Positions 1 through 19,813 of a stretch of 36,758 nt of DNA are shown here, piece after piece. Position 1 is the first letter of the stretch. The number at the start of each line of letters is the position of its first letter. The notes under the pieces were generated by a model. That model was not told the origin of the DNA, searched no databases, and worked only from the letters and a program-made list of their open reading frames with translations. The translations under genes were made by a program, and so were the position numbers. This stretch comes from Macrostomum lignano (lineage: Eukaryota): the NCBI GenBank assembly GCA_002269645.1, contig NIVC01002644.1, positions 63,726 to 100,483 of the forward strand, in the 5' to 3' direction.

Positions 1-114
1 ATCAATAGTTTACAGTATCTTTGGCTTTAGCAAGGCGATCTTGGTTAAGATATATTGGACAGAAAATTTTCCCTATATATAATTTGTGTAACTCTTGATT
101 TCCAGGTGAAAAAA

Positions 115-747
115 ATGGATATTTCAACTCCCGATCTAAAGCCACCGCCGCCGCCTCAGCAGCAGCGGGCTCAGCGGCATCTTCCACCTGTTCCACCCCC
201 GACGCCCCGTCGGGCTCTTGACGATGTTAGCCGACTGTTGCCGCAGTGCCAGATGCGCGCGCTTGAATGCGTCGGCTTCTGGCTGGCAGAAATTGCCGAT
301 TGTCTGCTGGCTAAAGGAGGTGGCGGTGGAGGAGGCGCCTGCGGCAGCAGCGGCTCAGCGCAGTCGGCCTGCGAGCTCATACTGAGCCTGGGCTCCGACG
401 GCTATACCGCCTACTGTTTAGCCAAATCCTATTTGGATCGGGGAGAATTTCTACGCGCTTGCGCCTACGCTAAGAAGCGTTGCGCTAACGATAGCGCTGA
501 GCAGTCGTCGCATCCGCTGCTGTATTTTCTGTATTTGTACTCAAAGTATCGAGCCGCTGAGAAGCGTCGATTGGACGACGAAGCCGAGCTGCGTTGGCTG
601 CAACAGCAGCAACCGTCGACGCAGCAACAACAGCAGCAGCAACAATCACCGCAGCAGCAGCAACAGCAGCAGCCTGCTCCTGTAGTTGGCGGAGCGGCCG
701 GTTTAGGAGGCTCCCGTAGTGCCGTTGTGCAGAATGAACTGATCGAG
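115..747 (+). CDS. CDC23: CDC23 exon 1 (N-terminal APC8 domain with polyP/polyG/polyQ insertions)
   Basis: ATG at 115 follows TTTCCAG (AG 104-105). Donor GAG|GTTAGT at 748, phase 0. Confidence 0.9.
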
Positions 748-3700
748 GTTAGTGCGGGGATAGCTATGCGTGTAAAGGCTACTCTGGGCATTCCTGCCCA
801 GCAGTCAATGTACACTTAAAACAATTATTCCTGCCCCGCCGCCAATGTACATTTAAAACAATTATTCCTGCCCCGCCGCCAATGTACATTTAAAACAATT
901 ATTCCTGCCCCGCCGCCAATTTACATTTAAAACAATTATTCCTGCCCCGCCGCCAATGTACATTCAAAACAATTCTTCCTGCCCCGCCGCCAATGTACAT
1001 TTAAAACAATTATTCCCGCCCCGCCGCTAATGTACATTCCAAACTATTATCCCTACCCTGCCGGGATAGTCGCCGTAATCGCCGCCAATGTACATCAAAG
1101 TACAAGAGCTTAAAGCATGCATTCTAGTTTCTTATCTACACCTCCAATTAAAAATAAAACTTTTGCAGATCAAACGCGAACTCGAACTTCGAATTCGCCG
1201 TCCAGGTCCCGGCCTGGACGCCTACTGTTACTATCTGTACGCGCTGGTGCTGAAATCGTTGGCTACGAGGATCAGGCTAGCGCGGCGCTGACCACCTCAC
1301 TGAGGCAGGAGTCAGCCCTGTGGCCGGCCTGGTCAATGCTGGCCGATCTGGTACGAAATCGGCACGAACTGGAAGGCCTAGTCTTGCCTAGGCATTGGAT
1401 GCGTCAGTTCTTTTTAGTTGCCGCCTATGTTCGACTGCACGAGAGCGGCAAAGCGGAACTGCTGCTAAACGAATTGACTGCAGCGCATGGCGGCTGCCTT
1501 GCCGATTGCGCCTATCTGATGCGCTATCTGGGCATTGTGAAGGATCAGCAGAGATCCATGGGCGAGGCTAAGGCTGTGTTTAAACAGCTGTTCGAGTCTG
1601 ATAGGCAAGTTTCTGGATTTGTTCGACTTTGCTTTTTTGCTTGTTTGGTTTTTTATACATTTCTAGAGCCGTTCTAAGAATTCCGATTAAGCTGATTTAA
1701 TGGTTCCAGTTTTAGCAGATTAACGGTGTGAATTTCGGTGGATTAACAGGGTGTGAATTTCGGTGGATTAACAGGGTATGAGATTCAGCGGATTAACAGA
1801 GTAATGAGATTCAGCGGATGAACTTGGTATGAAGTTTAGTGGATTAACGGGGTATGAGATTCAGCGGATTAACAGAGTATGAGATTCAGCGGATTAACAG
1901 AGTATGAGATTCAGCGGATTAACAGAGTATGAGATTCAGCGGATTAACAGAGTATGAGATTCAGCGGATTAACAGAGTATGAGATTCAGCGGATTAACAG
2001 AGTATGAGATTCAGCGATTAACAGAGTATGAGATTCAGCGGATTAAAATAATTAGATCCTACAGATTAACGGTGTGGTATTTGCGCGGATGAACAGCTGA
2101 ACAGGCGATTCTGTGGAAATCAATTGAGAGTAGCTGAGTAGCAGTGTAGCAAAATCAATTGAGTAGCTGAGTAGCAGTGTAGCAGAAATCAATTGAGTAG
2201 CTGAGTAGCAGTGTAGCAGAAATCAATTGAGTAGCTGAGTAGCAGTGTAGCAGAAATCAATTGAGTAGCTGAGTAGCAGTGTAGCAGAAATCTATTGAGT
2301 AGCTGAGTAGCAGTGTAGCAGAAATCAATTGAGTAGCTGAGTAGCAGTGTAGCAGAAATCTATTGAGTAGCTGTGCTCGCAACTCGCTCGCTAATTAAAA
2401 AACAAACTGGCCTACCCACCCTGACAGATGCGCCCTAGATGGTGCCGATGTCTACTCCAACATTCTGTACGTTGACAACAATCACTCTCTGATGGCCGAT
2501 CTGGCGCACCAATGCGTCCTAGTTGATAGTACCGCAGACCTGCTGCGTTGTTGGCAATTATTACGGATTAAGAGGCAGTCACGACAAGGCGCTGTCTTAT
2601 TTTCAACGGGCCCTGCGACTCAGGCCCGACTATGCTTTGGTGTGGATCCTGGTTGGGCACGAGTACCTGGAATTGAAGCAGGTAGCTGTTCCGCTTCGTG
2701 ACTTTTTTGGATTGACATTTTCTATAGGACAGGTAGATTTCAGTGTTCTCAGATAGAGTGGACAGGTAGAGTTCAGATCAGTTCAGATCAGATCAGATCA
2801 GATAGAGTGGACAATTAGAGTTCTAGAACGAGTGGACATGTAGAGTTCAGATAGAGTGGACAGGTAGAGTTCAGATAGAGTGGACAGTTCAGATAGTGGA
2901 CATGTAAAGTTCAGATAGAGTGGACAGGTAGAGTTCAGATAGAGTGGACAGGTAGAGCTCAGATAAAGTAGACAGGTAGAGTTCAGACAGTCTGGTGACA
3001 GGTAGAGTTCAGACAGTCTGGTGGACAGGTAGAGTTCAGACAGTTGTGGTGGACTGGTAGAGTTCAGACAGTGTGGTGGACAGGTAGAGTTCAGACAGTT
3101 GTGGTGGACAGGTAGAGTTCAGACAATTGTGGTGGACAGGTAGAGTTCAGACAGTTGTGGTGGACAGGTAGAGTTCAGACAGTGTGGTGGACAGGTAGAG
3201 TTCAGACAGTTGTGGTGGACAGGTAGAGTTCAGACAGTTGTGGTGGACAGGTAGAGTTCAGACAGTGTGGTGGACAGGTAGACAGCTAAGAGTGACCTGC
3301 GCAGGTAATAATCCCTATCCCTAACCCGCCCGAGCAGGTGAGCAATGCTATCCAAGCCTACCACAAGGCGGTCACCTTCAACCCGGCGGACTACCGCGGC
3401 TGGTACGGCCTGGGCCACGCGCACGAATTAAACAACAAATCCTATTACGCAATTTATTATTTCCGCGAATGCGAACGCCTGTGCAATACAGATCCTCGCA
3501 TTATGGTTGCCCTGGGCGAGAGCTACAGTCGGGTTAGTCTCAATGAGGAGGCGAAGAAATGCTACGTGAAAGCGTTTCACTTGGGCGATCCGGACACAAT
3601 GGCCCTGTTCCGGTTGGCTGAGCTGTACGAACATCTGGCGAGAAGGTGAGACTACCGTCGGGTTCTTTGATGACCGCTTCAACTCCTGGGGAATGCTGTT

Positions 3701-4469
3701 CGAATAAATGAGATTCTTATAGCAGATAAAAATCTCACTCTTGAGATTATCACGGGTGAGATTCTTGGAAAAGATAGTCTGAAGAGTGAGATTCTTGGAA
3801 AAGATAGTCTTAAGAGTGAGATTCTTGGAAAAGATAGTCTTCAGAGTGAGATTCTTGGAAAATATAGTCTTAAGAGTGAGATTCTTATGGCAGATAATCT
3901 CACGGGGGAGATTCTTAGAACAGAAAAACTCAAGTTTGAGATTCTTATAGCAGATCAAATCTCGGGGATTCGTGATACGGAAAATCCTAATAGTGGGATT
4001 TTTAATACAGATTTTCTCAATGATAATCTTATTCGAACGGTGTGAGATTTTGCTGACAGTTAATTTCTAGGGTTGAATTATCGTATTAATCATCACAAGA
4101 ATCCGTAGGTTGAGATTATATAATAAAGACTTAGATTTAATCTATCTAATCTCTCAACTACGCGCCATTAATCCGCAGGACAACGCGTGCAACGCCTACC
4201 TGATGCTGGTCAGCACAGTGATCAAAAGTGGCGCCACAGACACCAAAGCCGAGCCGGCAGCCTATCGATTCTTGGCCCAGCACTATCTGGATCGCAACCA
4301 GACTGAGGAGGCTGCCAAAGCCGCCAAGATGTGCTTAGACTATGCCGAGACTAAAGAATTCGGCAAAGATCTGCTGCGCCAGATTGGACTGCGCGCTACA
4401 GCTGGCGCTGGCGCCGCCGTCGCCGCCACTGGCGCTGTTGCAACTTCGTTTGGTTGGGCAAAGAATTGA
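115..4469 (+). CDS. CDC23: Cell division cycle protein 23 / APC8 (APC/C TPR subunit), 5 coding exons: 115-747, 1169-1604, 2428-2681, 3338-3645, 4179-4469; three apparent frameshifts (~1261, ~2530, ~3637)
   Basis: The spliced translation is collinear with CDC23 as I recall it: LAKSYLDRGEFLRA, YFLYLYSKY..AEKRRLDD, LDAYCYYLYALVLKSL, WPAWSML, DVYSNILYV, TCCVVGNYYGLRGSHDKALSYFQRALRL, GHEYLELK, AIQAYHKAV...DYRGWYGLGHAHE, AYRFLAQHYL, GKDLLRQI. Splice sites flank every block. Confidence 0.95.
791..1050. repeat. 37-bp minisatellite, ~7 copies (CAATGTACATTTAAAACAATTATTCCTGCCCCGCCGC), CDC23 intron 1
   Basis: Units start at 806, 843, 880 and onward, with period 37. Confidence 0.95.
1169..1604 (+). CDS. 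CDC23: CDC23 exon 2 (1-nt frameshift at ~1261)
   Basis: Acceptor TTTTGCAG at 1168. Homology switches from the frame of ORF 1088 to the frame of ORF 1117 at VLKSL/GYEDQA. Ends at a GC donor AG|GCAAGT. Confidence 0.88.
1715..2050. repeat. 25-bp minisatellite (GAGATTCAGCGGATTAACAGAGTAT), CDC23 intron 2
   Basis: Direct tandem copies that degenerate toward the 5' side. Confidence 0.95.
2115..2372. repeat. 34-bp minisatellite (GAGTAGCTGAGTAGCAGTGTAGCAGAAATCAATT), ~7 copies, CDC23 intron 2
   Basis: Units at 2161, 2195 and onward, with period 34. Confidence 0.95.
2428..2681 (+). CDS. CDC23: CDC23 exon 3 (frameshift at ~2528-2534)
   Basis: Acceptor CTGACAG at 2427. CALDGADVYSNILYV...LVD continues as PQTCCVVGNYY...ELKQ in another frame. 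Donor CAG|GTAGCT at 2682. Confidence 0.88.
2730..3283. repeat. 24-bp grading into 27/28-bp minisatellite (core GTGGACAGGTAGAGTTCAGA), CDC23 intron 3
   Basis: Tandem copies; period 28 at 3121, 3149, 3177. Confidence 0.95.
3338..3645 (+). CDS. CDC23: CDC23 exon 4 (TPR repeats)
   Basis: Acceptor GAGCAG at 3337. VSNAIQAY...LAELYEHL. Donor AAG|GTGAGA at 3646; the phase matches exon 5 only if one G is missing at ~3637 (CTG GGC GAG AAG). Confidence 0.9.
3705..3960. repeat. 30-bp minisatellite (GAGTGAGATTCTTGGAAAAGATAGTCTTAA), CDC23 intron 4
   Basis: Tandem copies; these produce the spurious LKTIFSKNLT ORF on the - strand. Confidence 0.9.
4179..4469 (+). CDS. CDC23: CDC23 exon 5 (terminal coding exon)
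   Basis: Acceptor CCGCAG at 4178. DNACNAYL...AYRFLAQHYLDRNQTEEAAKAAKMC...GKDLLRQI, then TGA at 4467-4469. Confidence 0.9.
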   Translation, partial: DNACNAYLMLVSTVIKSGATDTKAEPAAYRFLAQHYLDRNQTEEAAKAAKMCLDYAETKEFGKDLLRQIGLRATAGAGAAVAATGAVATSFGWAKN

Positions 4470-5156
4470 TGCGCCCAGATCGGGGGTTTGGCAAACTTTT
4501 TTGATAACGGGTAACCAGGCCAAGTAGCGTCCCAGAGTCACTTGCGTCGCCCCGGAGTCGTTGCAGGTAACGCACGTAAAATAGGTTCGTAGAGTCGTAT
4601 TTGGTGCGTGCCAAAGTCGCTGTAGATCGTCACTGAGTTGCGATTAAAGCGCATTTGCGTCGCTTCATGAATTAAAGTCACATCTCCGGCGTCTCAGCGG
4701 CGTTCTCCAGTTGCTAGAAAAAGTGGCCGAAAAAAGGCGCTTATTGAATTCGAATTGCACTCTCTAACTAGCCTACTGAGTTAGTAGAAAGTTAAGCGCC
4801 AACACAACAATTCTTGGACGACTCTTTCGCGACTCTTACGACACAACACGTCGCCTCTGGGTTGTTAAAAAGTCGGGAGAGTCGGTCTGGAGTCACTAGT
4901 GATTTGTTTGCAATGACTCTTTAGCGATTCTTGTCACGGTAACGTTTTCAACGGGAGGAGGGCTAAGAGGCTTCGCGGGGCAGCGAATTTGCCAACCCTC
5001 ATTGTCCAAATAATTAATGCTGACAAAGCTCAATTAATTAATAATTTTTTGTGTTTAAAGTGTACAATGTTTAAACTAAAATTTGTGTTTGCATTTTTGT
5101 AATTGCTAATCGAATTGATCAACTGTCTCCTAAAAGTTTGAATGCTATTACCGGTA

Positions 5157-5162
5157 AATAAA
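5157..5162 (+). terminator. Candidate polyadenylation signal for CDC23
   Basis: AATAAA about 690 nt after the stop codon, followed by T/GT-rich sequence. Confidence 0.45.
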
Positions 5163-5329
5163 TACATATTTTTGTAGCTCCATTTTGCGTGTTTGGTTTT
5201 CGCTGCTTTTGACAGCGAAATTTTATGTTACTATACATTTCCTACATTAGATTTTGAACATTTCGAGTACTCTGGTGCTATATCATTCGGCTCAGACTAG
5301 ATTTTGAGGCTACCACATCAGATAGCAAT

Positions 5330-5700
5330 GTTGGGGCTCTCTTCCAGATCAGTTGGAATCTAGGGGCTCTCTACCACATCGGATTAAATGTCGAACGTCT
5401 TCAACACCCGATTGAATTTTGGGGCTCTCTACCACACCAAGCTATATTTTCGGGCTCAACCTCACCAAGCGAGATTTTTCGGTTCCCTACTACGCCAATC
5501 AAGATTTTCGGGCTCTCTACATAACCAAGCGAGTTTTTTTTGGGCTCTCTACCGCACCATAGAAGAATTTTCGGGCTCCCTACGACACCAAAGAATATTT
5601 TCGGGCTCTCCACCACATCGTGCTAGATTTTCGGGCTCTCTACCACACCAAGCAAGATTTTACTAGGCTTTACCACACTAAACAAGATTCTCTAACTCTC
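5330..5700. repeat. Degenerate ~30-bp intergenic minisatellite (core GATTTTCGGGCTCTCTACCACACCAAGC)
   Basis: Recurrent GG(G)CTCTCTACCAC motifs at about 30-nt spacing. Confidence 0.8.
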
Positions 5701-5819
5701 AAGTGCATGGCGATGAAAATGTAGTATTTTTGCACAATAAATTAACTGCAACTGCGAGAGCTAATCAATAAAATAATTGCTCCAGCTAGAGGCAGCAGCC
5801 TCCTACAACCAGTAGCGGC

Positions 5820-6025
5820 ATGTCGGAGTCTCCAAGCGTCGCACCCTTAGTTGGTGACATCGGCTCGATAACCCAATCGATGCTTGACCGCTGGGCCTGT
5901 TTAGCCTACTGGACGCTGAACTGCTCAACCGGGTTGCCTTCGCTTTTGTCTACGGAGCCAATGGCAACGAGGCTGTGTTAGTTACTGGGGACGATTGCGT
6001 ATATTGCATCGGCAACGGACCGCGG
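5820..6025 (+). CDS. RCBTB1: RCBTB exon 1 (1-nt frameshift at ~5896)
   Basis: ATG at 5820 and an in-frame ATG at 5880. MLDRW continues as LFSLLDAELLNRVAFAFVYGANGNEAVLVT in a shifted frame. Donor GTTAGT at 6026; its phase disagrees with exon 2 by 1 nt. Confidence 0.8.
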
Positions 6026-9000
6026 GTTAGTGTGTACTTTTGTTGTATCCCCTCTCTCCCTGTGTCCATCTATGTGCCCCCTCTCTCCCTGTGACCCCCT
6101 CTCATGTGTCCCCTCTATGCCCCCTCTCTCCCCTAATCTCCACCCTCTTTTTCTCCCTTACCCTCCATCCTGTCTCTATTCCCTCCTCCCTTCTTATTGT
6201 GATGAATAAATTCGGGACGTAATGCTGATTAATCAACAATTGATTGACCGCAAATCAAATATATCTGATGCTTCACTAGTACAATATTAGCTAATTTAAA
6301 TGGTTGCTACGCGAAAGTATATCAATATCAATAGTAATCTCGCTACACTGTACTCTAATCTTTCTAGGCCCCGGCATAATCTCCGAAGCGCACCTGAATG
6401 TCCCTGGCGGCCTGGCCGTTCAACTTGACGCCCTGTGCGGCTGTCGAGTAGTTGAATTGGCCAGCGGCAGCGGGCCGCACCTCCTGGCCCTGACTGACAG
6501 CGGAGATCTGTACACCTGGGGCAGCAATAGTCATTGCCAACTAGGCAACGGCAATACTAATCAACTGCTGCAGCCAACCCTGTCCAGCCTGCTCAAGGTG
6601 TGCAGCATCGCCTGCGGCGCCAGTCATTCCTTGGCGCTAACACAGGACGGCGAGGTCTACGCTTGGGGCTGCAATAACTGCGGACAGGTGAGGGAAATTC
6701 TTTCGCTGGCTAATCTCCTCTCTCTCTCCTGGCTAATCTCCTCTCTCTCTCCTGGCTAATCTCCTCTCTCTCCTGGCTAATCTCCTCTCTCTCTCTCCTG
6801 GCTAATCTCCTCTCTCTCTCCTGGCTAATCTCCTCTCTCTCCTGGCTAATCTCCTCTCTCTCTCTCCTGGCTAATCTCCTCTCTCTCTCCTGGCTAATCT
6901 CCTCTCTCTCCTGGCTAATCTCCTCTCTTTCTTCTGGCTAATCTCCTCTCTTTCTTCTGGCTAATCTCCTCTCTTTCTTCTGGCTAATCTCCTCTCTTTC
7001 TTCTGGCTAATCTCCTCTCTTTCTTCTGGCTAATCTCCTCTCTTTCTTCTGGCTAATCTCCTCTCTTTCTTCTGGCTAATCTCCTCTCTCTCTCCTGGCT
7101 AATCTCCTCTCTCTCTCCTGGCTAATCTCCTCTCTCTCCTGGCTAATCTCCTCTCTCTCTCCTGGCTAATCTCCTCTCTCTCCTGGCTAATCTCCTCTCT
7201 CTCTCTCCTGGCTAATCTCCTCTCTCTCCTGGCTAATCTCCTCTCTCTCTCCTGGCTAATCTCCTCTCTCTCTCCTGGCTAATCTCCTCTTTCTTCTGGC
7301 TAATCTCCTCTCTTTCTTCTGGCTAATCTCCTCTCTTTCTTCTGGCTAATCTCCTCTCTTTCTTCTGGCTAATCTCCTCTCTTTCTTCTGGCTAATCTCC
7401 TCTCTTTCTTCTGGCTAATCTCCTCTCTTTCTTCTGGCTAATCTCCTCTCTTTCTTCTGGCTAATCTCCTCTCTTTCTTCTGGCTAATCTCCTCTCTTTC
7501 TTCTGGCTAATCTCCTCTCTCTCTCCTGGCTAATCTCCTCTCTCTCCTGGCTAATCTCCTCTCTCTCTCTCCTGGCTAATCTCCTCTCTCTCCTGGCTAA
7601 TCTCCTCTCTCTCTCCTGGCTAATCTCCTCTCTCTCTCCTGGCTAATCTCCTCTCTCTCCTGGCTAATCTCCTCTCTCTCTCTCCTGGCTAATCTCCTCT
7701 CTCTCCTGGCTAATCTCCTCTCTCTCTCCTGGCTAATCTCCTCTCTCTCTCCTGGCTAATCTCCTCTCTCTCCTGGCTAATCTCCTCTCTCTCTCCTGGC
7801 TAATCTCCTCTCTCTCCTGGCTAATCTCCTCTTTCTTCTGGGTAATCTCCTCTCTTTCTTCTGGCTAATCTCCTCTCTTTCTTCTGGCTAATCTCCTCTC
7901 TTTCTTCTGGCTAATCTCCTCTCTTTCTTCTGGCTAATCTCCTCTCTTTCTTCTGGCTAATCTCCTCTCTTTCTTCTGGCTAATCTCCTCTCTCTCCTGG
8001 CTAATCTCCTCTCTCCTAGAGCTCTAGAAACAAGATGCGGAAGGAAAATACATTTGATAATCCAAAGCGAGTTTCCTTTTTTCTTCTGTATACAGTGACC
8101 CGCTCTCCTGTCTCATCTCTCAGTCTAGTCTAATCGCCCTCCTTCCACAGGTGGGCTCGGGCACCACAGTCAACCAGCCTTCGCCAAGGCGCCTCGCCGG
8201 GCCGCTAACGAATCGTCGAATTCGCCGCGTCGGCGCCTGTCAATCCGCTTCGTTCGCCGTCAGCGTCGCCGGCGAAGTGTTCTCCTGGGGCTGCAACAAG
8301 CACGGCCAGCTGGGCATCGGCGGCGCGAGCGGCGCTAATCAGAACGTGCCAGTCCGATTGACGTCGCTTGAGCGTCGATTTATCGACAGTTTAGCCTGCG
8401 GCCAGAGTCACGTGCTGGCGCTCACGGACGAAGGCGAATTATGGGCCTGGGGTGCGAATTCGTTCGGCCAGTTGGGCCGCTTGGACTGCCGGTCGAATGG
8501 CGATAGCGGCAGCGGAGGGGGCGGCGGCGGCGGCTGCGGAGGCGGCAGCAGCGGCGGCTCCAACAATAACGGCAATAACGCGTTCACGCCGATCCGAGTG
8601 CTGCAACAGCGCGGCAGATTTATTGATATTGGCGCTATACATTATAGTCACACTTCGGCTGGCGTGACCGAGACCGGATTAGTGCTGGCCTGGGGTCTCT
8701 GCCGGGGCCAGCCGGTCTCCGCTCCCATAGTAACCAGATTCCTCAGCGTCAACGACGTGTTCGCCTGCATGTCGCATCCGCCAGTCACGTGCAAACGTTT
8801 AGACTTTAGTAAGTTTGTGTGTATTGTACACTGTATAGGTGAAATCGTTCGATATCGTTCTGATTCGCCGCTAATCCCACTCTGAGATTCGCCGCTACTC
8901 CCTCCCTGAGATTCGTCATTAATCCCTCCCTGAGATTCGCCGCTACTCCCACTCTGAGATTCGCCGCTACTCCCTCCCTGAGATTCGTCATTAATCCCTC

Positions 9001-12000
9001 CCTGAGATTCGCCGCTACTCCCACTCTGAGATTCGCCGCTACTCCCTCCCTGAGATTCGTCATTAATCCCTCCCTGAGATTCGCCGCTAATCCCACTCTG
9101 AGATTCGCCGCTAATCCCACCCTGAGATTCGTCATTAATCCCTCCCTGAGATTCGTCGTTAATCCCTCCCTGAGATTCGCCGCTAATCCCTCCCTGATAT
9201 TTGCCGCTAATCACACCCTGAGATTCGTCATTAATCCCTCCCTGAGATTCGCCGCTACTCCCTCCCTGAGATTCGCCGCTACTCCCTCCCTGAGATTCGC
9301 CGCTACTCCCTCCCTGAGATTCGCCGCTACTCCCTCCCTGAGATTCGCCGCTACCCCCTCCCTGAGATTCGCCGCTACTCCCTCCCTGAGATTCGCCGCT
9401 ACTCCCTCCCTGAGATTCGCCGCTACTCCCTCCCTGAGATTCGCCGCTACTCCCTCCCTGAGATTCGCCGCTACTCCCTCCCTGAGATTCGCCGCTAATC
9501 CCTCCCTGATATTTGCCGCTAATCACACCCTGATATTCGTCATTAATCCCTCCCTGAGATTCGTTGTTAATCCCTCCCTGAGATTCGTTGTTAATCCCTC
9601 CCCATATCCACCGCTAATCCCTGTAAAGTCTGAAGGCCGCGTGTTAAGCTGAGCGAGAAAATCAAACACGGGGCCCTAACTGGCCAGGTTAGCGATATAT
9701 ATATTTGAGGTTTTACGCGTACGGCATACATGACTCATGCGACACAAGATGTACATTTATAATATAACTCACTCGCCTATTTAGAACAAATTGATAATAA
9801 TATTGCGAGGCAATTACACTTCTCCCCAAAAAACGAAAAAGCTCAAAAATGCGGATTAAAAGGATAAGGAAAAAGGAATAAAACATTAAGGGTAAAAAAC
9901 ATTTGTCTCAGCCCTTAGCACCAGTTACCCGTCAAAACCCGTCAAACTCTGTAGCTGATAGGCTTGTCCTTGGCCGCTCTCGGGTGCGGCCTCTCAGCAA
10001 TGCCGCGCTCCGGCGAGGCGGCGCCAGCGTCCGCTTCTGGTGGTGGGTCCTCGGTCGCTGTCAGAGGCCGGATGTGCGTCAGGTGGCGAGTGCATGTCCG
10101 GTCGCCTTGCCGCAGGACGTAGGAATCGCCTCGCCTGTCGGTGACGGTCCAGGGTTCGAGCTCGAAAGGCGTTTGAGTTTTCGTGCGTCTCGTCCGCTTG
10201 CGGAGAACCGCCGAACCCGGCTTGACATTGGCTGTCTTGGCCCTCCTGGAGCGGTTGAAAGCTGCTGCCATCTGGTTGTTGTAGGCCTCGTGACGCTTTG
10301 CGAGTTCGGCTCGGTCGTGCTGCACAGGCTGCGATGGTTGGATTGACGGGAGGCCGTCGTTGAGGGCTCGGCCCATGAGCAGTTCGGCTGGTGCCACGCC
10401 AGTTGCCGAGTGCGGAGTGACGCGATGAGCGAGCAGCCAGTCGTCGAGTGCGGTGCGCCAGTTGCGTCCTTCTGCGATGGCCGCTCTGATGACCTTGTTG
10501 ATGCACCTGTTGACTCGCTCGGTCGCTCCGTTCGCCTCTGGGTGCAGCGGACAGATCCGGCGATGCTTGATGCCGAACTCTGAGAGGAAGTTTGTGAATT
10601 CTGCCGAGTTAAACGGAGGTCCATTGTCGCTGACGATTTCCAACGGGATGCCGTATCTGCTAAACAGAGTCCGGAGATGCGGAAGCACTGCCTCTGCTGA
10701 TGTTGAGCTGACTATGTCGACCTCGGGAAATTTTGAAAAGAGATCGGTTGTCACCAGGAGCATTTTCCCTTGGACTGGGCCGTAAAAGTCCATTCCAAGA
10801 ACTAGCCATGCTCCGTCCGGAAGTTGCGACGGTGAGAGTGGTGGCGGTGCGAGGCTCTTCGGCGATGTCGCTTGGCAAGGGAAGCAAGACTGGACGAACG
10901 TCTGGCAGTCGCTTCTCATCGCTGGCCACCAGACTTTGGTTTGCAGTCTGTCCATAGTTTTTCGGCAGCATTGGTGGCCTGCATGTGCCAGCTGGAGCAC
11001 CGTCCGACGTAAGCTGCTCGGGATGACGATCAACGAGCTCCGTAGTAGCACGCCGTCATGTTCTGAAAGCTCCTGCTGCAGGCAGGACAAGGCTCGCAGT
11101 TCTCTGTTCTGCTTGTCCCATTGACCAGTTCGTAGAGCTGATAGAGCTGCTTGGATCGTGCCGTCTGACTTTGAAGCCTCCTGAATTGTTGCAAAGTTCA
11201 GTCCTTTCGAAGTAGAGCCGATGGCGACTGCGTTGATGAAGCGTCTGTCCAGGAGTTCCCCGGGGTTGTCCTTTGTCTGCATTTCAGGTTGTCTACTGAG
11301 GACATCCGCTGGATTCTGTGGCCCCGGCTGATAGATGAGCTTGAATTTGAGGTGCTGCACTCTTAAAGCCATCCGTTCAATCCTTGGTGGAGGCCTGGAA
11401 CCAGGTTGAAAAAGCGGGACTAATGGGCGGTGATCCGTGATGACTGTGAGATCTGGGCAGCCGCTGAGGTAGTGCTCGAAACGTAGGCACCCGAATTTCA
11501 CCGCAAGCGCCTCGCGTTCAATTTGGGCGTATCGCTGCTCAACTGGCGTGAGCGACCTGCTGGCGAAGGCGACCGGTTTGCGAGCGCCTTTCTCATCCAC
11601 CTGGCTGAGAATGGCACCCAGGCCGACTGGTGAGGCGTCCACATGAACTTCTGTTGGGAGATTCACGTCAAAGAAGGCCAGGACGCTCTCCTTGCAGATC
11701 GCTGCTCTTGTTTGCAGGAATGCTTCTTGTTGCCTTTCTGACCAGTACCATTTATGACCTTTTTTAGCAGTTCTCGCATTGGCTGCGTCAGATCTGAGAA
11801 GTTCGGAACGAACCTGGACAGGTAGGTGGCCAAACCGAGGAATGAGCGCAGCTCTGACACATTTGTTGGCTCCTTAAAGTCTTTGACGGCCTTGATCTTC
11901 TCGGCTGCAGGCTGAACGCCTCGTGCGCTGATGCGCATACCAAGAAAATCGATGAAAGGCTGTGCCAGACGACACTTGTTCGGGTTGAGTGTGATTCCAT

Positions 12001-15000
12001 GGTCTTGTAGGCGCTTGAAGCACTGTTTTAGTCGGATGTTGTGCTCTTCCATCGTGCTCGCAAAGACAGTGATGTCATCGTGTGCCCATCGGACACCGTC
12101 AAGGCCGCTCAGGAAGCCTGTCATAACCCTTTGCAATATCTCGGATGCGTTGGTGAATCCCATGCTGAGTCTGGTCAGTCGCATGAGACCCAGTGGGGTG
12201 CTGAAGGTGAAGATGTGACGGGATTCCGGTTTGACGAGGATCTGGTGGAAAGCCTTTACGATGTCGAGCTCGCTGAATACCGTCGAACCCGCCATTTCGT
12301 CCGTGATCTCTTCAAAGGTTGGGATGGGCTGCTTTTCTGGCACGGCAAATGAGTTGACGTCGCGCAGGTCTTGGCAGATGCGGATGCCACTGCCTTCTTT
12401 CGGGACGACAACCATGCGGGAGACCCACGGTGACGGGCCGTTGACGCGCTCGATGATTCCTTGGTCGAGGAGAGCCTGAAGTTCCGCGATGACCGCCGAC
12501 CGCTGGTGGACGGGAACTCTGGAGGGTGGGTGACAGACTGGGACAGCTTCTGGTCGAAGACGAACGTCGACCTCGACGCCCTTAACGCAGCCAAGGCCTT
12601 CGAAGATTGACTGAAACTCACCAAGGATGCTGCTGATGCGGAGTTCGGTTGGAAGATCTTGGTCGACATCTCTGTACTTGGAGAACAGCTCTTGAATACC
12701 TGATGCGGCTAGATTTTCCGTGGGCTGCACCGAGTTGACTTCAACTGTTGGATGTTGGATGTGCAGAATTCCCATGTTGAAAGCGGTTTCTCAACCAAGT
12801 AGTGTGGTTCCACAGCCTTTGGTGATGTAGAATGAAGCTAGTTGTCTGCTAGCTGCGGTGCTCACGTTGAGGTCAGCGACACCCAGGACTTGGAGAGGCG
12901 TTGTGGACCCGTAGCTGAAAATTGGATGGATGGCGCTGCGCAGTCGAACATTTCTTAGCCGCCGGAAGTTCTCCTCGCTCATGACGTTGCAACTGGCTCC
13001 ACTATCCACGAGTACGATGAAGTCCTTGCCCTCGATCCTCAGATTAGTGTTGGCGGAGTTGCGTCTGGGTGCCGTTTTTTGCGACTGGATAGTGAAAGCC
13101 TCCTCATTTAGCGAATCGTGATCGATGAAGACCCCCTCAGCTTCTTTGTCCGCTACGGCGTTGATGCTGGAGCTTGTTTGAGGCCTGCGTTGTCTGCATG
13201 CTTTGGCGAGATGGTTTGGCTTGCCGCATGCCAGGCAGGTTTTGCCTTTTGCCGCGTTGCATGAGCTGTGCCCGCGTTCGCCGCATCGATAGCAGCTGAT
13301 TGGGCCGCTGTTTGCTTGGCCGCCAGGGACCCGCTGACTGTTCGGGCGCGTTCCGCTGTCTCTGAACTGCTTCGGTGCCGCTCTGTGCACTGCTGCGATG
13401 CTACTGGAGTTCTCAATGGCCGTGGCCTGCTCTTCTGCTGCTTCAAACGCGCGCGCTTGTCTCAACGCATCGCCGAGAGAGATGTTGGACTCCTGCAGTA
13501 ATCTTCGCCGAAGTTTATCGGAGCAGCATGTGGCCACTATCTGATCTCTGATTAGGGAGTCCTTGAGTGCTGAGAACTCGCATGTCTCGGCCGCTGAGTT
13601 GAGTCGGGAGTACCAGGAGTCCACTGGCTCTCCGGTTTGCTGAACGCATAGACGAAACTGATAGCGGGCAAATACGATGTTGTTGCGCTCCTTGAAGTGC
13701 TCTTTTATTGCTGCGAGCAGAGTTTCGAGGCTGTCTTTCTTGTCATTTGGCAGGTCTTTAATGATTTGCGCGATTTCTCTGCCGGCCGTGTAGGCCAGGA
13801 GCTTGCACTTCTGAGTTTCGTCTTTGATGCCTGACGCTTCGATAAAGTCACAAAAATGATCGGACCATTTGTTCCAGCGTTTACCGGCATTCTGCTGATC
13901 TGCACTAGTGCTGAATTGCTCAGGGGGTGGCAGTGAGATGAATTGAGCCATGAGTGACTGGACAAAGTGGGCTTGCTTGCGACGCCACTGTAAAGTCTGA
14001 AGGCCGCGTGTTAAGCTGAACGAGAAAATCAAACACGGGGCCCTAACTGGCCAGGTTAGCGATATATATATTTGAGGTTTTACGCGTACGGCATACATGA
14101 CTCATGCGACACAAGATGTACATTTATAATATAACTCACTCGCCTATTTAGAACAAATTGATAATAATATTGCGAGGCAATTACAATCCCTCCCTGAGAT
14201 TCGTTGCTAATCCCTCCCCTGAGATTCGTCGCTAATCCCTTCCCTGAGATTCGCCGCTAATCCGCCTGCGAACTTTGCTTCAGATCCATCGAAGATAATT
14301 TTAGTTTTAATCCGCCCTGAACAGGGATGCTAATCTGCCTGTATGAAAGCTCTGACTATCGCCCGTAAATTCTGCTTCCAGAGCCAAACTACACCGTCAG
14401 CATAGCACAGAGCATTCAGTTGGCATTCAACGATTCCGCTACTAGCGACGTAACTTTCCAAGTGGACGGCAAGCTGATCCACGCGCACAAGAGCATTCTG
14501 CGAATCCGGTGCGACCATTTTCGCACCATGTTCAACGAGAATTGGAACCAGACACAGTCGGCGGGCGTGGTGAGAAATGCCGTTTTTGGGGCGGAGAGAG
14601 TAGAGAAGAGACAGTAGAGACTAGAGAAGAGACAGTAGAGACTAGAGAAGAGACAGTAGAGACTAGAGAAGAGACAGTATAGAGTAGAGAAGAGACAGTA
14701 GAGACTAGAGAAGAAACAGTATAGAGTAGAGAAGAGACAGTAGAGAGTAGAGAAGAGACAGTAGAGACTAGAGAAGAGACAGTAGAGAGTAGAGAAGAGA
14801 CAGTAGAGAAGAGAAGAGACAGTAGAGAGTAGAGAAGAGACAGTAGAGAAGAGACAGTAGAGACTAGAGAAGAGACAGTAGAGAGTAGAGAAGAGACAGT
14901 AGAGAGTAGAGAAGAGACAGTAGAGAGTAGAGAAGAGACAGTAGAGACTAGAGAAGAGACAGTAGAGAGTAGAGAAGAGACAGTAGAGAGTAGACAAGAG

Positions 15001-16233
15001 ACAGAGAGCAGAGAACAGACAGTAGAGAGAAGAGAATAGACAAAGAAAAAAGAGAAGAGAGTAGAGAGTAAAGAAGAGACAGTAGAGACTAGAGAAGAGA
15101 CAGTAGAGAGTAGAGAAGAGACAGTAGAGAACAGACAGTAGAGAGTAGAGAAGAGACAGTAGAGAGTATAGAGAAAAGAGCGGAATGAGCAAGAGACAAA
15201 CTTCAGTCGTCACTACTTATTTCGCTAATAATTGGTCATGAATTTCCTAACGGCCACTGCACCATCCCAAATTGCATCGCAGATTGCGATTCGCGACTTC
15301 TCCTACCCAGTGTATTGGGCCTTCCTGGAATTCCTGTACACAGACAACGTGAATCTGTCCCCGGAAGAGGCCATCAGCCTGTTGGATTTGGCCAACTGCT
15401 ATTGCGAAGCTCCGCTAAAAGCGCATTGCGAGAGGCTAATTAAAAACAGCATCACCATTGACAACGCCATGATGCTTTATTTAGCTGCTGTAAAATTCTC
15501 CGCTTCGGTAAGTTTAGCTGTGGTTTTTACAGAAATCCAACCAAAACTTTCATTGTCTACTTTTAGTAGAGCGTCAATCGGTTTTTTATTAAAACTGATT
15601 ACTGATATTTAATTGGGAATTGTGGGGGTTGTGGAGTTTGTGGATTGTGGAGTTTCTGGATTGTGCAGTTTGTAGATTGTGGAGTTTGTGGATTGTGGAG
15701 TTTGTGGATTGTGGAGTTTGTGGATTGTGGAGTTTCTGGATTGTGGAGTTTGTGGATTGTGGAGTTTGTAGATTGTGGAGTTTGTGGATTGTGGAGTTTG
15801 TGGATTGTGGAGTTTCTGGATTGTGGAGTTTCTGGATTGTGGAGTTTGTAGATTGTGGAGTTTGTGGATTGTGGAGTTTGTGGATTGTGGAGTTTCTGGA
15901 TTGTGGAGTTTCTGGATTGTGGAGTTTCTGGATTGTGGACATACGAGTTTTGAAAGGTTTTTTAAGTTTCAAGTTAAGTTTCTGTAACAACGTCTCCAAA
16001 ATTATTTTTCAATTTTTATGCTTACTACTCTTAGTAGATTTGATATGCCGCTTTCGAAATAACCTATTAAAATTATCGGTACTATTTGACAGGAGCTTCA
16101 AAAGTTCTGCTTCGAATTCGCCATCCACCATCTGACTCGAGTCGTGTCCACCGAGGCCTTCGACGAGCTCGACGAGGCCACTCTGCGCTCCTTCCTGCGG
16201 CAGGCGGCCGCCGCAGGCGCTTTCAAATATTGA
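5820..16233 (+). CDS. RCBTB1: RCC1 and BTB domain-containing protein (RCBTB1/2-like), 6 coding exons: 5820-6025, 6368-6687, 8151-8808, 14382-14569, 15283-15507, 16093-16233
   Basis: Collinear with RCBTB1 as I recall it: DRW.[79 protein letters not shown], BTB domain SDVTFQVDGKLIHAHKSILRIRCDHFRTMF, FSYPVYWAFLEFLYTD, C-terminal GAFKY. RCBTB1 and RCBTB2 cannot be distinguished. Confidence 0.95.
6045..6190. repeat. Degenerate C/T-rich low-complexity repeat, RCBTB intron 1
   Basis: Repeated CCCCTCTCTCCC-like motifs. Confidence 0.6.
6199..6268 (+). ncRNA. SNORD82: Intronic C/D-box snoRNA, SNORD82/U82-like (predicted 18S rRNA 2'-O-methylation guide)
   Basis: Box C GTGATGA 6199-6205, guide GGGACGTAAT, D' CTGA 6225-6228, C' TGATTGA 6241-6247, D CTGA 6265-6268. 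The guide is the exact complement of conserved 18S ATTACGTCCC. A second copy lies at 19611-19691. Confidence 0.78.
6368..6687 (+). CDS. RCBTB1: RCBTB exon 2 (RCC1 repeats)
   Basis: Acceptor CTAATCTTTCTAG at 6367. Donor CAG|GTGAGG at 6688. Confidence 0.9.
6706..8017. repeat. 21-25-bp minisatellite CTGGCTAATCTCCTCTC(T/C)n, roughly 55-60 copies, RCBTB intron 2
   Basis: Direct tandem copies in alternating blocks of two variants (..CTCTCTC and ..CTTTCTT). Confidence 0.97.
8151..8808 (+). CDS. RCBTB1: RCBTB exon 3 (RCC1 repeats, Gly/Ser/Asn-rich insert)
   Basis: Acceptor CCACAG at 8150. Donor A|GTAAGT at 8809, phase 1. Confidence 0.92.
8866..9621. repeat. 24-bp minisatellite (TGAGATTCGCCGCTACTCCCTCCC), left arm, RCBTB intron 3
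   Basis: Tandem copies, read as GGSSGESQ on the - strand. The array resumes after the LTR element. Confidence 0.95.
9622..9818 (-). repeat. 3' LTR
   Basis: TGTAAAG...AATTACA; identical to 13989-14185 except G9653 versus A14020. Confidence 0.97.
9819..9827 (-). promoter_or_regulatory. Polypurine tract GGGGAGAAG
   Basis: Directly abuts the 3' LTR on the - strand. Confidence 0.85.
9942..11760 (-). CDS. pol: Retrotransposon RNase H + integrase
   Basis: VDASPVGLGAILSQ, YAQIEREALAV, ITDHRPL, an HHCC zinc finger (AHAGHQ...CFPCQ) and the DDE triad (MDFYGP / SDNGPPF / NGATER). The frame extends back to the T-run at 11760-11765. Confidence 0.93.
11663..12790 (-). CDS. pol: Retrotransposon reverse transcriptase
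   Basis: SPWVSRMVVVPK, IRICQDLRDVN, FSELDIVKAFHQI, RLSMGF, WAHDDITVF, LNPNKC, FLG, LRSFLGLATYLSRFVPN. Same frame as gag-PR across the TGA at 12791. Confidence 0.93.
   Translation of the reverse strand, partial: ETAFNMGILHIQHPTVEVNSVQPTENLAASGIQELFSKYRDVDQDLPTELRISSILGEFQSIFEGLGCVKGVEVDVRLRPEAVPVCHPPSRVPVHQRSAVIAELQALLDQGIIERVNGPSPWVSRMVVVPKEGSGIRICQDLRDVNSFAVPEKQPIPTFEEITDEMAGSTVFSELDIVKAFHQILVKPESRHIFTFSTPLGLMRLTRLSMGFTNASEILQRVMTGFLSGLDGVRWAHDDITVFASTMEEHNIRLKQCFKRLQDHGITLNPNKCRLAQPFIDFLGMRISARGVQPAAEKIKAVKDFKEPTNVSELRSFLGLATYLSRFVPNFSDLTQPMRELLKKVINGTGQKGNKKHSCKQEQRSARRASWPSLT
12791..13951 (-). CDS. gag: Retrotransposon Gag + aspartic protease
   Basis: ATG at 13951 (MAQFISLPPP). Two zinc knuckles, CYRCGERGHSSC and CLACGKPNHLAKAC. 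Protease motif VLVDSGAS. Ends at an in-frame TGA that interrupts the polyprotein. Confidence 0.9.
   Translation of the reverse strand: MAQFISLPPPEQFSTSADQQNAGKRWNKWSDHFCDFIEASGIKDETQKCKLLAYTAGREIAQIIKDLPNDKKDSLETLLAAIKEHFKERNNIVFARYQFRLCVQQTGEPVDSWYSRLNSAAETCEFSALKDSLIRDQIVATCCSDKLRRRLLQESNISLGDALRQARAFEAAEEQATAIENSSSIAAVHRAAPKQFRDSGTRPNSQRVPGGQANSGPISCYRCGERGHSSCNAAKGKTCLACGKPNHLAKACRQRRPQTSSSINAVADKEAEGVFIDHDSLNEEAFTIQSQKTAPRRNSANTNLRIEGKDFIVLVDSGASCNVMSEENFRRLRNVRLRSAIHPIFSYGSTTPLQVLGVADLNVSTAASRQLASFYITKGCGTTLLG
13970..13987 (-). promoter_or_regulatory. Candidate primer-binding site TGGCGTCGCAAGC
   Basis: Begins with TGG 1 nt after the 5' LTR and is complementary to a tRNA ending GACG-CCA. 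The tRNA identity is not assignable here. Confidence 0.7.
13989..14185 (-). repeat. 5' LTR
   Basis: Direct repeat of 9622-9818. Confidence 0.97.
14186..14270. repeat. 24-bp minisatellite, right arm (continuation of 8866-9621)
   Basis: CCCTGAGATTCG..GCTAATCCCTCC units resume right after the LTR. Confidence 0.9.
14382..14569 (+). CDS. RCBTB1: RCBTB exon 4 (BTB domain, N-terminal half)
   Basis: Acceptor TTCCAG at 14381; the phase 1 join gives LDF-K-PNYTV. Donor GTG|GTGAGA at 14570. Confidence 0.92.
14592..15178. repeat. 21-bp purine-rich minisatellite (AGAGTAGAGAAGAGACAGTAG), RCBTB intron 4
   Basis: Tandem copies, read as LYCLFST on the - strand. Confidence 0.95.
15283..15507 (+). CDS. RCBTB1: RCBTB exon 5 (BTB domain, C-terminal half)
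   Basis: Acceptor TCGCAG at 15282. IAIRDFSYPVYWAFLEFLYTD. Donor TCG|GTAAGT at 15508. Confidence 0.92.
15621..15939. repeat. 16-bp minisatellite (GGATTGTGGAGTTTGT), ~20 copies, RCBTB intron 5
   Basis: Direct tandem copies. Confidence 0.95.
16093..16233 (+). CDS. RCBTB1: RCBTB exon 6 (terminal; not in the ORF track)
   Basis: Acceptor TTTGACAG at 16092. ELQKFCFEFAIHHLTRVVSTEAFDELDEATLRSFLRQAAAAGAFKY* matches the RCBTB1 C-terminus. Confidence 0.9.
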   Translation, partial: ELQKFCFEFAIHHLTRVVSTEAFDELDEATLRSFLRQAAAAGAFKY

Positions 16234-16367: not shown

Positions 16368-16373
16368 AATAAA
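16368..16373 (+). terminator. Candidate polyadenylation signal for RCBTB
   Basis: AATAAA 135 nt after the stop codon, followed by a T-rich tract. Confidence 0.6.
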
Positions 16374-19472: not shown

Positions 19473-19610
19473 TCCTTCCGCCCTCAGTCCGCCCCTCTGC
19501 TCCGCTCCTTTCCGCCTTCTAATTTCGCTTTCGTTTTCCATCACTTTTTGTCAATATTCTGGATCAATTGAATAGTGACATTTTTCCTCTAACCAACAAA
19601 GTATTCAAGA

Positions 19611-19691
19611 AGCAAGCAGTGATGACACAAACGGGACGTAATGCTGATCTAGTTTAGTGATTGATCGCAAATCTGATGTCTGAGGCTTGCT
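19611..19691 (+). ncRNA. SNORD82: Second C/D-box snoRNA copy, SNORD82/U82-like
   Basis: Terminal stem AGCAAGC/GCTTGCT, box C GTGATGA 19619-19625, the same guide CGGGACGTAATG, D' CTGA 19644-19647, C' TGATTGA, D CTGA 19680-19683. Confidence 0.82.
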
Positions 19692-19813
19692 TTTTATCTT
19701 AACTTAAAGACCCACAAATCTCTGATGTTTCCGGGTTCTTTTGCAAGTTTTTTTCCAATTTTTCAACCAGAGCCACGCAGGTGAATGTTGAGCAAAACCG
19801 GGACATTCATTTT

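What the first reader, a model, noticed from the sequence alone, without database searches (positions are those of the whole stretch)
6199..6268. Unannotated intronic C/D snoRNA predicted to guide 18S methylation at the human A1678-equivalent
Seen: a complete C, D', C', D box set, with the D box 99 nt upstream of the 3' splice site, and a guide GGGACGTAAT immediately before D'. Known: the conserved 18S segment GAUUACGUCCCUGCCCUUUGUACACACCGCCC pairs with this guide over 10 bp. The D'+5 rule points to the A of UUAC, 25 nt upstream of the C equivalent to human Cm1703, i.e. A1678, which is the SNORD82/U82 target. The guide carries the ACG form matching invertebrate rRNA rather than the human AAG. 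Vertebrate U82 is hosted by nucleolin, so an RCBTB host would be a new host relationship.
Basis: partly seen in the sequence, partly recalled or inferred. Interest (0 to 1): 0.72.

Follow-up and report, generated by a model that had tools for sequence, protein, structure and literature searches.

The report
Flatworm SNORD82-type methylation guide snoRNA
The flagged 70 bases are a real but ordinary flatworm (Macrostomum lignano) copy of the known SNORD82-type small nucleolar RNA that directs a sugar methylation on 18S ribosomal RNA; it lacks the usual closing stem, and a better-formed twin lies 13 kb downstream in the same window.

Summary
On the + strand are GTGATGA (6199-6205), GGGACGTAAT (6214-6223), one spacer G, CTGA (6225-6228), a C'-like TGATTGA (6241-6247) and CTGA (6265-6268). 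They lie in sense orientation in a 342-nt intron (6026-6367) of an RCC1+BTB gene of Macrostomum lignano, 99 nt from the 3' splice site.

It is not chance. The C-box/guide/D' pattern occurs twice in the window and never in 100 shuffles. The second copy (B, about 19607-19695) shares every box and the guide, differs in the spacers, and has an 11-bp terminal stem.

Metagenomic sequences found with the same pattern match Rfam SNORD82 (RF00158), two of them above its gathering score. The SNORD82 consensus has the same layout: guide, one nucleotide, D'. The predicted target is therefore the A homologous to human 18S Am1678 and Drosophila Am1806.

Caveats:
- Copy A has no terminal stem.
- A and B score only 12 and 17 bits against RF00158 (gathering score 43).
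- The M. lignano 18S sequence, expression and methylation could not be checked.
- The RCBTB host is unremarkable, because relatives sit in eEF2 and other genes.

Verdict: a new member of a known kind, of low to moderate interest.

The parts
6026..6367 (+). Host intron of the RCC1+BTB (RCBTB-like) gene; phase 1, G|GTTAGT ... TTTCTAG|GC
   Evidence: Exon translations and the alignment of four copies of the locus. Host protein identified as M. lignano RCC1+BTB.
6199..6205 (+). Copy A: C box GUGAUGA
   Evidence: Identical in all four copies of the locus and in paralogue B.
6214..6223 (+). Copy A: antisense guide GGGACGUAAU, complementary to 18S AUUACGUCCC. U6220 is the fifth nucleotide upstream of D' and pairs with the predicted target A.
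   Evidence: (duplex -17.1 kcal/mol with the ACG form, -11.3 with the human AAG form). Same register as the Rfam SNORD82 consensus.
6225..6228 (+). Copy A: D' box CUGA, preceded by the spacer G6224
6229..6247 (+). Copy A: predicted 8-bp hairpin (6229-6236 paired with 6240-6247) that brings D' next to C'. It includes the C'-like box UGAUUGA at 6241-6247. The only substitution among the four locus copies (A/T at 6231) lies here.
   Evidence: Fold; alignments. The C' box is identical in paralogue B.
6249..6256 (+). Copy A: CGCAAAUC, an 8-mer after C' that is identical in paralogue B. Its role is unknown (second guide, accessory pairing, or shared descent).
   Evidence: Not testable without the species' rRNA.
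6265..6268 (+). Copy A: D box CUGA, 99 nt upstream of the 3' splice site and about 90 nt upstream of the likely branch site CTAAT (6355-6359). No terminal stem follows it.
19607..19695 (+). Copy B, a paralogous SNORD82-type snoRNA. Parts: 5' stem strand 19607-19617; C box 19619-19625; guide 19633-19642; D' 19644-19647; C' UGAUUGA 19658-19664; CGCAAAUC 19666-19673; internal CUGA 19673-19676; D box 19680-19683; 3' stem strand 19685-19695 (11 bp, one G-U).
   Evidence: Weak SNORD82 match of 17.2 bits. Present in L003; present in L002 with a 4-nt insertion in the guide.

Best explanation
Window 6199-6268 is one of two paralogous SNORD82/U82-type (Drosophila snoRNA:CD41-type) box C/D snoRNA genes in this stretch of the Macrostomum lignano genome.

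Proposed mechanism, by analogy with the established box C/D pathway:
1. The RCC1+BTB pre-mRNA is spliced.
2. Snu13/15.5K, Nop56, Nop58 and fibrillarin assemble on the C/D and C'/D' motifs of the intron.
3. After debranching, exonucleases trim the intron to an RNA of about 75 nt.
4. In the nucleolus the 5' guide GGGACGUAAU pairs with 18S AUUACGUCCC, just 5' of the decoding-centre strand.
5. Fibrillarin 2'-O-methylates the A paired to the fifth nucleotide upstream of D'. This is the A homologous to human Am1678 and Drosophila Am1806.

Copy A would act redundantly with copy B at 19.6 kb and probably with further genomic copies.

Shown here: the motifs, their register, the paralogy, the relatedness to SNORD82-matching sequences, and the intronic sense position.

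Inferred: processing, snoRNP assembly, presence of the target sequence in this species' 18S, and the methylation itself.
For: - Complete box set with spacings typical of C/D snoRNAs: 19 nt from C to D', 17 nt from C' to D.
- The pattern occurs twice in the window and 0 times in 100 shuffles.
- Paralogue B keeps the C box, the guide plus D' (16/16 nt), the unusual C' UGAUUGA (7/7) and the D box, while the spacers have diverged. This is the conservation pattern expected of a working guide RNA.
- A metagenome scan with the C-box/guide/D' pattern returned 18 loci. About 10 have D boxes and terminal stems. SNORD82 (RF00158) is their best Rfam family: 50.2 and 43.5 bits are above the gathering score of 43, and the others score 26-40 bits.
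- The RF00158 consensus shows the same layout: 5' guide, one nucleotide, D'.
- SNORD82 is assigned to 18S-Am1678. Drosophila Am1806 is shared with human and Xenopus and lies 25 nt before Cm1831.
- The target string ATTACGTCCC... appears as 18S sequence or primer in 194 papers spanning plants, fungi, algae, nematodes, cnidarians, insects and helminth PCR work.
- The element is in sense orientation in a spliceosomal intron, 99 nt from the 3' splice site.
- It is intact in all four copies of the locus.
Against: - No terminal stem. The best adjacent pairing is 2 bp, and the duplex of the 12-nt flanks is +1.0 kcal/mol. B and ten relatives give -3.9 to -14.3 kcal/mol. Only a weak 5-bp A/U-rich helix lies 13 nt outside the D box.
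- The Rfam SNORD82 model gives 12.3 bits (E = 5.4), far below the gathering score, and SNORD82 is not the top family. The whole-window Rfam scan found nothing.
- Conservation among the four locus copies is no better than the intron background: 1/70 against 8/243 variable columns, p = 0.36.
- The guide duplex is only 10 bp.
- The D box is about 90 nt from the likely branch site, whereas the human optimum is about 50 nt.
- The only flatworm RiboMeth-seq list, from a planarian, has Cm1638 but no Am 25 nt upstream. That list is short, with 24 sites in 18S.
- The M. lignano 18S sequence could not be obtained.
Confidence: 0.62

Rival explanations
1. Copy A is an inactive or decaying duplicate of a B-type SNORD82 gene. 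It kept the boxes and guide through recent descent but lost the 5' strand of the terminal stem. No stable snoRNP would form, the intron would be degraded after splicing, and the methylation would be guided by copy B and other copies.
For: - A is the only one of 12 family members examined that lacks a terminal helix.
- Its 3' flank UGCUUCAC still resembles B's 3' stem strand GGCUUGCU, while its 5' flank is unrelated CU-rich repeat sequence. This points to loss of the 5' strand.
- There is no excess conservation over the intron background among the four locus copies.
- The family tolerates broken copies: B in L002 has a 4-nt insertion in its guide.
- The distance to the branch site is longer than the known optimum.
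Against: - All four boxes and the guide are intact in four locus copies that differ by 3-5% elsewhere and by several indels in the same intron.
- Sense orientation in a spliced intron is the standard productive context.
- According to the review read, assembly of intronic C/D snoRNPs is generally coupled to splicing, and long external stems matter mainly for splicing-independent assembly. From my own knowledge, natural vertebrate C/D snoRNAs without terminal stems are known (Darzacq and Kiss 2000).
Confidence: 0.33
2. The motifs are a chance arrangement in an AT-rich stretch of intron and have no relation to snoRNAs.
For: - The Rfam gathering scan is empty.
- The single-sequence fold is not more stable than shuffles (z = -0.93).
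- C' is imperfect and there is no terminal stem.
Against: - The pattern is absent from 100 shuffles yet present twice.
- The second copy is a textbook C/D snoRNA with an 11-bp stem and shares 16/16 nt of guide plus D' and the odd C' box.
- The same guide and box layout occurs in sequences that pass the SNORD82 model.
- My own rough estimate (inference): a perfect in-register 10-mer to any of about 100 known methylation sites, next to a CTGA, with a perfect C box and a D box at the right spacing, is expected about 1e-5 times per window.
Confidence: 0.02
3. The element is a real C/D RNA whose main role is not 18S methylation. Examples would be action in cis on splicing of its host RCBTB pre-mRNA, or guidance of another target through the conserved CGCAAAUC segment.
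For: - An 8-mer after C' is identical in A and B but sits in a different register to the D box.
- Intronic snoRNAs that pair with neighbouring intron sequence and affect host splicing appear in the reference list of the Drosophila paper (Bergeron et al. 2023, seen).
Against: - The only segment shared with distant relatives is the 18S guide.
- No target for the second segment could be sought without the species' RNAs.
- B is not in the RCBTB gene yet keeps the same sequence, which argues against a host-specific role.
Confidence: 0.03

Closest known systems
Human SNORD82 (U82/Z25), Rfam RF00158
   Same: - Box C/D snoRNA of about 70 nt.
- The guide lies in the 5' half, followed by one nucleotide and then D'.
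- Guide GGGAC(U/G)UAAU pairs with the same 18S segment in the same register, so the homologous A (Am1678) is selected.
- Intron-encoded in sense orientation.
   Different: - The guide has G where the vertebrate-type consensus has U, matching ACG instead of AAG in 18S.
- The D'-C' and C'-D spacers are longer, and C' is UGAUUGA.
- Copy A has no terminal stem, whereas the consensus has 5 bp.
- The model scores 12.3 bits (A) and 17.2 bits (B), below the gathering score of 43.
- The host is an RCC1+BTB gene. From my own knowledge, the vertebrate host is nucleolin intron 5 (Rebane and Metspalu 1999).
Drosophila melanogaster snoRNA:CD41 (FBgn0086074; formerly named Me18S-A1806, from my own knowledge)
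   Same: It is assigned to 18S Am1806, the fly equivalent of human Am1678, 25 nt upstream of Cm1831. Fly 18S has the ACG form, as most invertebrates do (my own knowledge).
   Different: Its sequence and host gene could not be retrieved here, because no supplementary files were held. No direct alignment was made.
Paralogue B in the same window (19607-19695)
   Same: Identical C box, guide plus D', C' box, CGCAAAUC and D box, on the same strand.
   Different: - B has an 11-bp terminal stem and A has none.
- The spacers differ in sequence and length.
- B lies in unannotated sequence 1.4 kb downstream of a DUF1168 gene, between two tRNA-like repeats. It is not in the RCBTB gene.
Metagenomic SNORD82-like snoRNAs (L006, L012, L014, L016-L019, L021, L022)
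   Same: Same C-box/guide/D' block with the ACG-type guide. SNORD82 is their best Rfam family.
   Different: - They are shorter (55-65 nt from C box to D box) and have terminal stems.
- Their hosts are eEF2 introns in six loci and a PLD-like gene in one.
- The source organisms are unknown.

Membership tests
Box C/D snoRNA (general) | C box RUGAUGA near the 5' end and D box CUGA near the 3' end, 55-120 nt apart | tested here: met
   GUGAUGA at 6199-6205 and CUGA at 6265-6268, 70 nt overall.
Box C/D snoRNA (general) | Internal D' and C' boxes | tested here: met
   CUGA at 6225-6228. C' is UGAUUGA at 6241-6247, with one extra U, but is identical in paralogue B.
Box C/D snoRNA (general) | 5'/3' terminal stem next to boxes C and D (stem I of the kink-turn) | tested here: not met
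   The best adjacent pairing is 2 bp, and the flank duplex is +1.0 kcal/mol. Paralogue B has 11 bp. Some natural intronic C/D snoRNAs lack this stem (my own knowledge), so this lowers confidence in activity more than in identity.
Box C/D snoRNA (general) | Antisense element of at least 10 nt ending next to D or D', with the target nucleotide opposite the fifth position | tested here: met
   10 contiguous Watson-Crick pairs with AUUACGUCCC, -17.1 kcal/mol, U6220 at position 5.
Box C/D snoRNA (general) | Accumulates as a stable small RNA bound by fibrillarin, Nop56, Nop58 and Snu13 | not testable with these tools
   No expression data were available.
SNORD82 / U82 (RF00158) | Score at or above the Rfam gathering threshold (43 bits) | tested here: not met
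   A scores 12.3 bits (E = 5.4) and B scores 17.2 bits (E = 0.44). The whole-window gathering scan is empty. Relatives with the same guide reach 50.2 and 43.5 bits.
SNORD82 / U82 (RF00158) | 5' guide complementary to the 18S segment around A1678, in the register guide + 1 nt + D' | tested here: met
   Window GGGACGUAAU-G-CUGA against consensus GGGACUUAAU-A-CUGA. SNORD82 is assigned to Am1678.
SNORD82 / U82 (RF00158) | The species' own 18S contains the complementary sequence and the A is 2'-O-methylated | not testable with these tools
   The M. lignano rRNA is not in the window and could not be retrieved. The segment is widely conserved in eukaryotes. The planarian RiboMeth-seq list does not include the site.
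SNORD82 / U82 (RF00158) | Hosted in a nucleolin intron (a vertebrate feature, not a defining one) | tested here: not met
   The host is an RCC1+BTB gene. Relatives lie in eEF2 and a PLD-like gene, so the host is not a family character.

The most novel reading that the evidence does not exclude
A box C/D snoRNA with no terminal stem is nevertheless processed from the RCBTB intron and is active. The 8-mer CGCAAAUC, conserved after C' in both paralogues, would then be a functional second element. One possibility is accessory pairing to the UUGCG that lies just 5' of the target in typical 18S. Together these would extend the Am1678-equivalent methylation to flatworms, where the only published RiboMeth-seq map (a planarian) does not list it.
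Probability: 0.15. Interest if true: 0.35.

Novelty: new member of a known kind. Interest (0 to 1): 0.25.

Why it matters
- It gives Macrostomum lignano, a regeneration and stem-cell model with no snoRNA catalogue that I could find, a first pair of well-supported methylation-guide genes.
- It predicts that the Am1678/Am1806 site near the decoding centre, listed so far for human, Xenopus and Drosophila, is also methylated in a flatworm.
- The two copies, one with and one without a terminal stem, form a natural test of how much that stem matters for intronic snoRNA production.
- Beyond that it is routine annotation. The host-gene difference is expected for a mobile gene family.

Tried and rejected
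- The Rfam gathering scan of the whole window gave 0 hits. Permissive scans of the intron and of 18.2-23.2 kb gave only sub-threshold hits.
- Single-sequence folding was not informative (z = -0.93).
- I compared the four copies of the locus (window = L004, plus L001, L002, L003) to look for selective constraint. The copies are too similar: 1/70 against 8/243 variable columns, p = 0.36.
- P0002, a 94%-identical paralogue protein, has no contig on record.
- RCBTB orthologues from an unknown organism (L023, intronless) and the annelid Ridgeia (L024) contain no such element. The host relationship is therefore lineage-specific.
- Literature: there are no hits for Me18S-A1806 or for SNORD82 plus A1678. 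No M. lignano snoRNA catalogue was found. No supplements are held for the Drosophila map, so the CD41 sequence was not compared.
- ARAGORN found no tRNA, although there is tRNA-like sequence near B.
- I did not build a covariance model from the metagenomic relatives. They were selected with the same pattern, so a hit on A or B would be circular.
- I found no way to obtain the M. lignano 18S or 28S with these tools. The D-box guide and the CGCAAAUC element therefore could not be scanned for targets.
Full report
**What is in the sequence**

- C box GTGATGA, 6199-6205.
- Spacer ATAAATTC.
- Guide GGGACGTAAT, 6214-6223, followed by a single G (6224).
- D' box CTGA, 6225-6228.
- A 12-nt spacer.
- TGATTGA, 6241-6247, a C' box with one extra U.
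- A 17-nt spacer CCGCAAATCAAATATAT.
- D box CTGA, 6265-6268.

The one-nucleotide gap before D' is a small correction to "immediately before". It is also what puts U6220 at the fifth position upstream of D', opposite the A of UUAC in AUUACGUCCC. The 10-bp guide-target duplex is predicted at -17.1 kcal/mol with the ACG form and -11.3 kcal/mol with the human AAG form.

**Organism and host gene**

The flanking exons encode an RCC1+BTB protein. It is 99% identical to Macrostomum lignano BOX15_Mlig003223g3.

The window is part of contig NIVC01002644.1 of assembly GCA_002269645.1. L004 positions 1-19465 equal window 2769-22233 at 100% identity.

Three further copies of the locus were fetched:
- L001, 99.8% identical.
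- L003, about 97% identical.
- L002, about 95.6% identical. It lies on the same contig as the window, in inverted orientation.

Aligning them showed that the window copy lacks one G in the upstream exon. With that G restored, the intron is phase 1, G|GTTAGT ... TTTCTAG|GC, at window 6026-6367.

**Is it chance?**

No.
- The window contains only eight RTGATGA sites. Only two have both a D' and a D box at snoRNA-like spacing.
- The pattern TGATGA-N(5-18)-GGGACGTAAT-N-CTGA matches twice, against none in 100 shuffles.
- The 15-mer GGGACGTAATGCTGA matches twice, against 0.09 expected even with two mismatches allowed.

**The second copy**

The other match reads:

aagaagcaagc-a-GTGATGA-cacaaac-GGGACGTAATG-CTGA-tctagtttag-TGATTGA-tcgcaaat-CTGA-tgt-CTGA-g-gcttgcttttt

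It spans about 19607-19695. Its flanks form an 11-bp terminal stem with one G-U pair. It is the only C/D candidate in the whole window with a terminal stem of 5 bp or more.

Copies A and B share:
- the C box;
- the guide plus D' (16 of 16 nt);
- the unusual C' box (7 of 7 nt);
- an 8-mer, CGCAAATC;
- the D box.

The C-to-guide spacer, the D'-to-C' spacer and most of the C'-to-D spacer differ in sequence and length. Functional parts kept and the rest free to change is the comparative evidence that the four near-identical locus copies could not give. Among those four copies, 1 of 70 columns varies inside the element against 8 of 243 in the rest of the intron (p = 0.36).

**Which family**

The Rfam gathering scan of the window is empty. 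Against SNORD82 (RF00158, gathering score 43), copy A scores 12.3 bits (E = 5.4) and copy B scores 17.2 bits (E = 0.44). By that criterion neither is a member.

I then scanned metagenome contigs with the C-box/guide/D' pattern and obtained 18 loci.
- About ten have a D box and a terminal stem.
- For these, SNORD82 is the best Rfam family. L014 scores 50.2 bits and L006 scores 43.5 bits, both above the gathering score. The others score 26-40 bits.
- The printed RF00158 consensus is aGCACAAaUGAUGAauaACAAAGGGACUUAAUACUGAAAC...CUGAUGUGC. This is the same architecture: a 5' guide, one nucleotide, then D'.

Because the register is identical, the window's guide selects the A homologous to the SNORD82 target. 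That target is 18S-Am1678. Drosophila has Am1806, shared with human and Xenopus but not with yeast, Arabidopsis or Dictyostelium. It lies 25 nt before Cm1831 and is assigned to snoRNA:CD41.

The string ATTACGTCCCTGCC... appears as 18S sequence or primer in 194 papers across plants, fungi, algae, nematodes, cnidarians, insects and helminth diagnostics. From my own knowledge, mammals have AAG at this place. The M. lignano 18S itself could not be obtained. That is the main untested link, although a guide kept perfectly in two diverged paralogues argues that the target exists.

**Weak points of copy A**

- It has no terminal stem. The best adjacent pairing is 2 bp, and the duplex of the 12-nt flanks is +1.0 kcal/mol. 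B and the ten relatives give -3.9 to -14.3 kcal/mol.
- Only a weak 5-bp A/U helix (6195-6199 with 6282-6286) lies outside the element.
- Its 3' flank TGCTTCAC resembles B's 3' stem strand GGCTTGCT, while its 5' flank is CT-rich repeat. A therefore looks like a copy that lost the 5' strand of the stem.
- Its D box is about 90 nt from the likely branch site (CTAAT, 6355-6359). Human C/D snoRNAs prefer about 50 nt.
- The planarian RiboMeth-seq list has Cm1638 but no Am 25 nt upstream. That list holds only 24 sites in 18S.

On the other side, A is intact in all four locus copies, whereas B carries a GCTA insertion inside its guide in L002. The family is clearly redundant, and either copy could be the working one on a given haplotype.

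**Host gene**

That U82 lies in nucleolin intron 5 is from my own knowledge (Rebane and Metspalu 1999). The point carries little weight:
- Six of the metagenomic relatives lie in introns of eEF2. In L012 and L022 a Z221/R21b-like snoRNA lies 1.3-1.5 kb away.
- One relative lies in a PLD-like gene.
- The annelid Ridgeia RCBTB gene (L024) and an intronless RCBTB (L023) have no such element.

Host switching is therefore normal for this family.

**Mechanism**

The most likely mechanism is the canonical one. The element is released from the spliced intron and protected by Snu13, Nop56, Nop58 and fibrillarin bound to the C/D and C'/D' motifs. A predicted 8-bp hairpin, 6229-6236 with 6240-6247, brings D' and C' together. 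The RNA pairs through GGGACGUAAU with 18S, and fibrillarin 2'-O-methylates the A opposite position 5.

- Shown: motifs, register, paralogy, family link and intronic context.
- Inferred: processing, assembly, the target in this species and the modification.

My estimates:
- About 0.6 that A is an active guide.
- About 0.3 that A is a stem-less relic, with B and other copies doing the work.
- About 0.02 that it is chance.
- About 0.9 that it belongs by descent to the SNORD82-type family.

**Verdict**

This is a correct and careful first-stage call of an ordinary object: a new member of a known kind. Interest is low to moderate. It adds an annotation for a model flatworm and a testable prediction of a conserved rRNA methylation.

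Noticed in passing
window 19607-19695 (+): A second SNORD82-type C/D snoRNA gene (copy B) with the same guide and an 11-bp terminal stem. It lies in sequence with no called protein gene, 1.4 kb downstream of a DUF1168 gene. A strong polypyrimidine tract plus AG at 19740-19770, 87 nt after the D box, suggests it may sit in an intron of an unannotated non-coding host.
   Followed up: partly
L002 20563-20581 (copy of window 19633-19647): The B copy of the inverted duplicate locus carries a 4-nt insertion (GCTA) inside the guide (GGGACGTA-GCTA-ATGCTGA), which would destroy the 18S pairing. It is either a real degenerate copy or an assembly error.
   Followed up: partly
window about 6016-6019: One G is missing from a GGG run in the exon upstream of the host intron, compared with three other copies of the locus. 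This shifts the RCBTB reading frame. The gene product recorded for this copy (P0122) has only 197 aa and only the BTB domain. It is either a pseudogene copy or a long-read homopolymer error.
   Followed up: partly
window 6249-6256 and 19666-19673: CGCAAATC, directly after the C' box, is identical in both paralogues but sits in a different register to the D box (positions 9-16 against 7-14). It could be a second guide, accessory pairing, or simply shared descent.
   Followed up: no
window 19285-19470 and 19806-19950: Two direct copies, 81-94% identical, of an element of about 160 nt flank copy B. The element ends in tRNA-like sequence on the minus strand (GGTTCGATTCC T-arm). ARAGORN calls no tRNA, so it is probably a tRNA-derived SINE.
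   Followed up: partly
window 1-22233 against L002 (same contig NIVC01002644.1, 24947-48395, reversed): The whole ANAPC8 / RCBTB / DUF1168 gene block is present twice in inverted orientation on one contig. Further copies lie on two other contigs (L001, L003). This fits the duplicated M. lignano genome.
   Followed up: partly
window 790-1063, 1708-2373, 2749-3282, 8862-9620: Several minisatellite arrays showed up as stacked self-similar BLAST hits. The one at 8862-9620 has a 24-nt period, lies inside an RCBTB intron and creates a long spurious minus-strand ORF (GGSSGESQ repeats).
   Followed up: no
window 6040-6198: The 5' half of the host intron is a CT-rich repeat (CCCCTCTCTCCCTGTG-like units) with a 30-nt length difference between locus copies. 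The snoRNA-like element starts exactly where this repeat ends.
   Followed up: no
L006, L012, L017, L018, L019, L022 (metagenome contigs): SNORD82-like snoRNAs with the ACG-type guide sit in introns of eEF2 genes of unidentified eukaryotes. L017 holds two copies 1.9 kb apart. L012 and L022 also hold a Z221/R21b-like C/D snoRNA in a neighbouring intron.
   Followed up: partly
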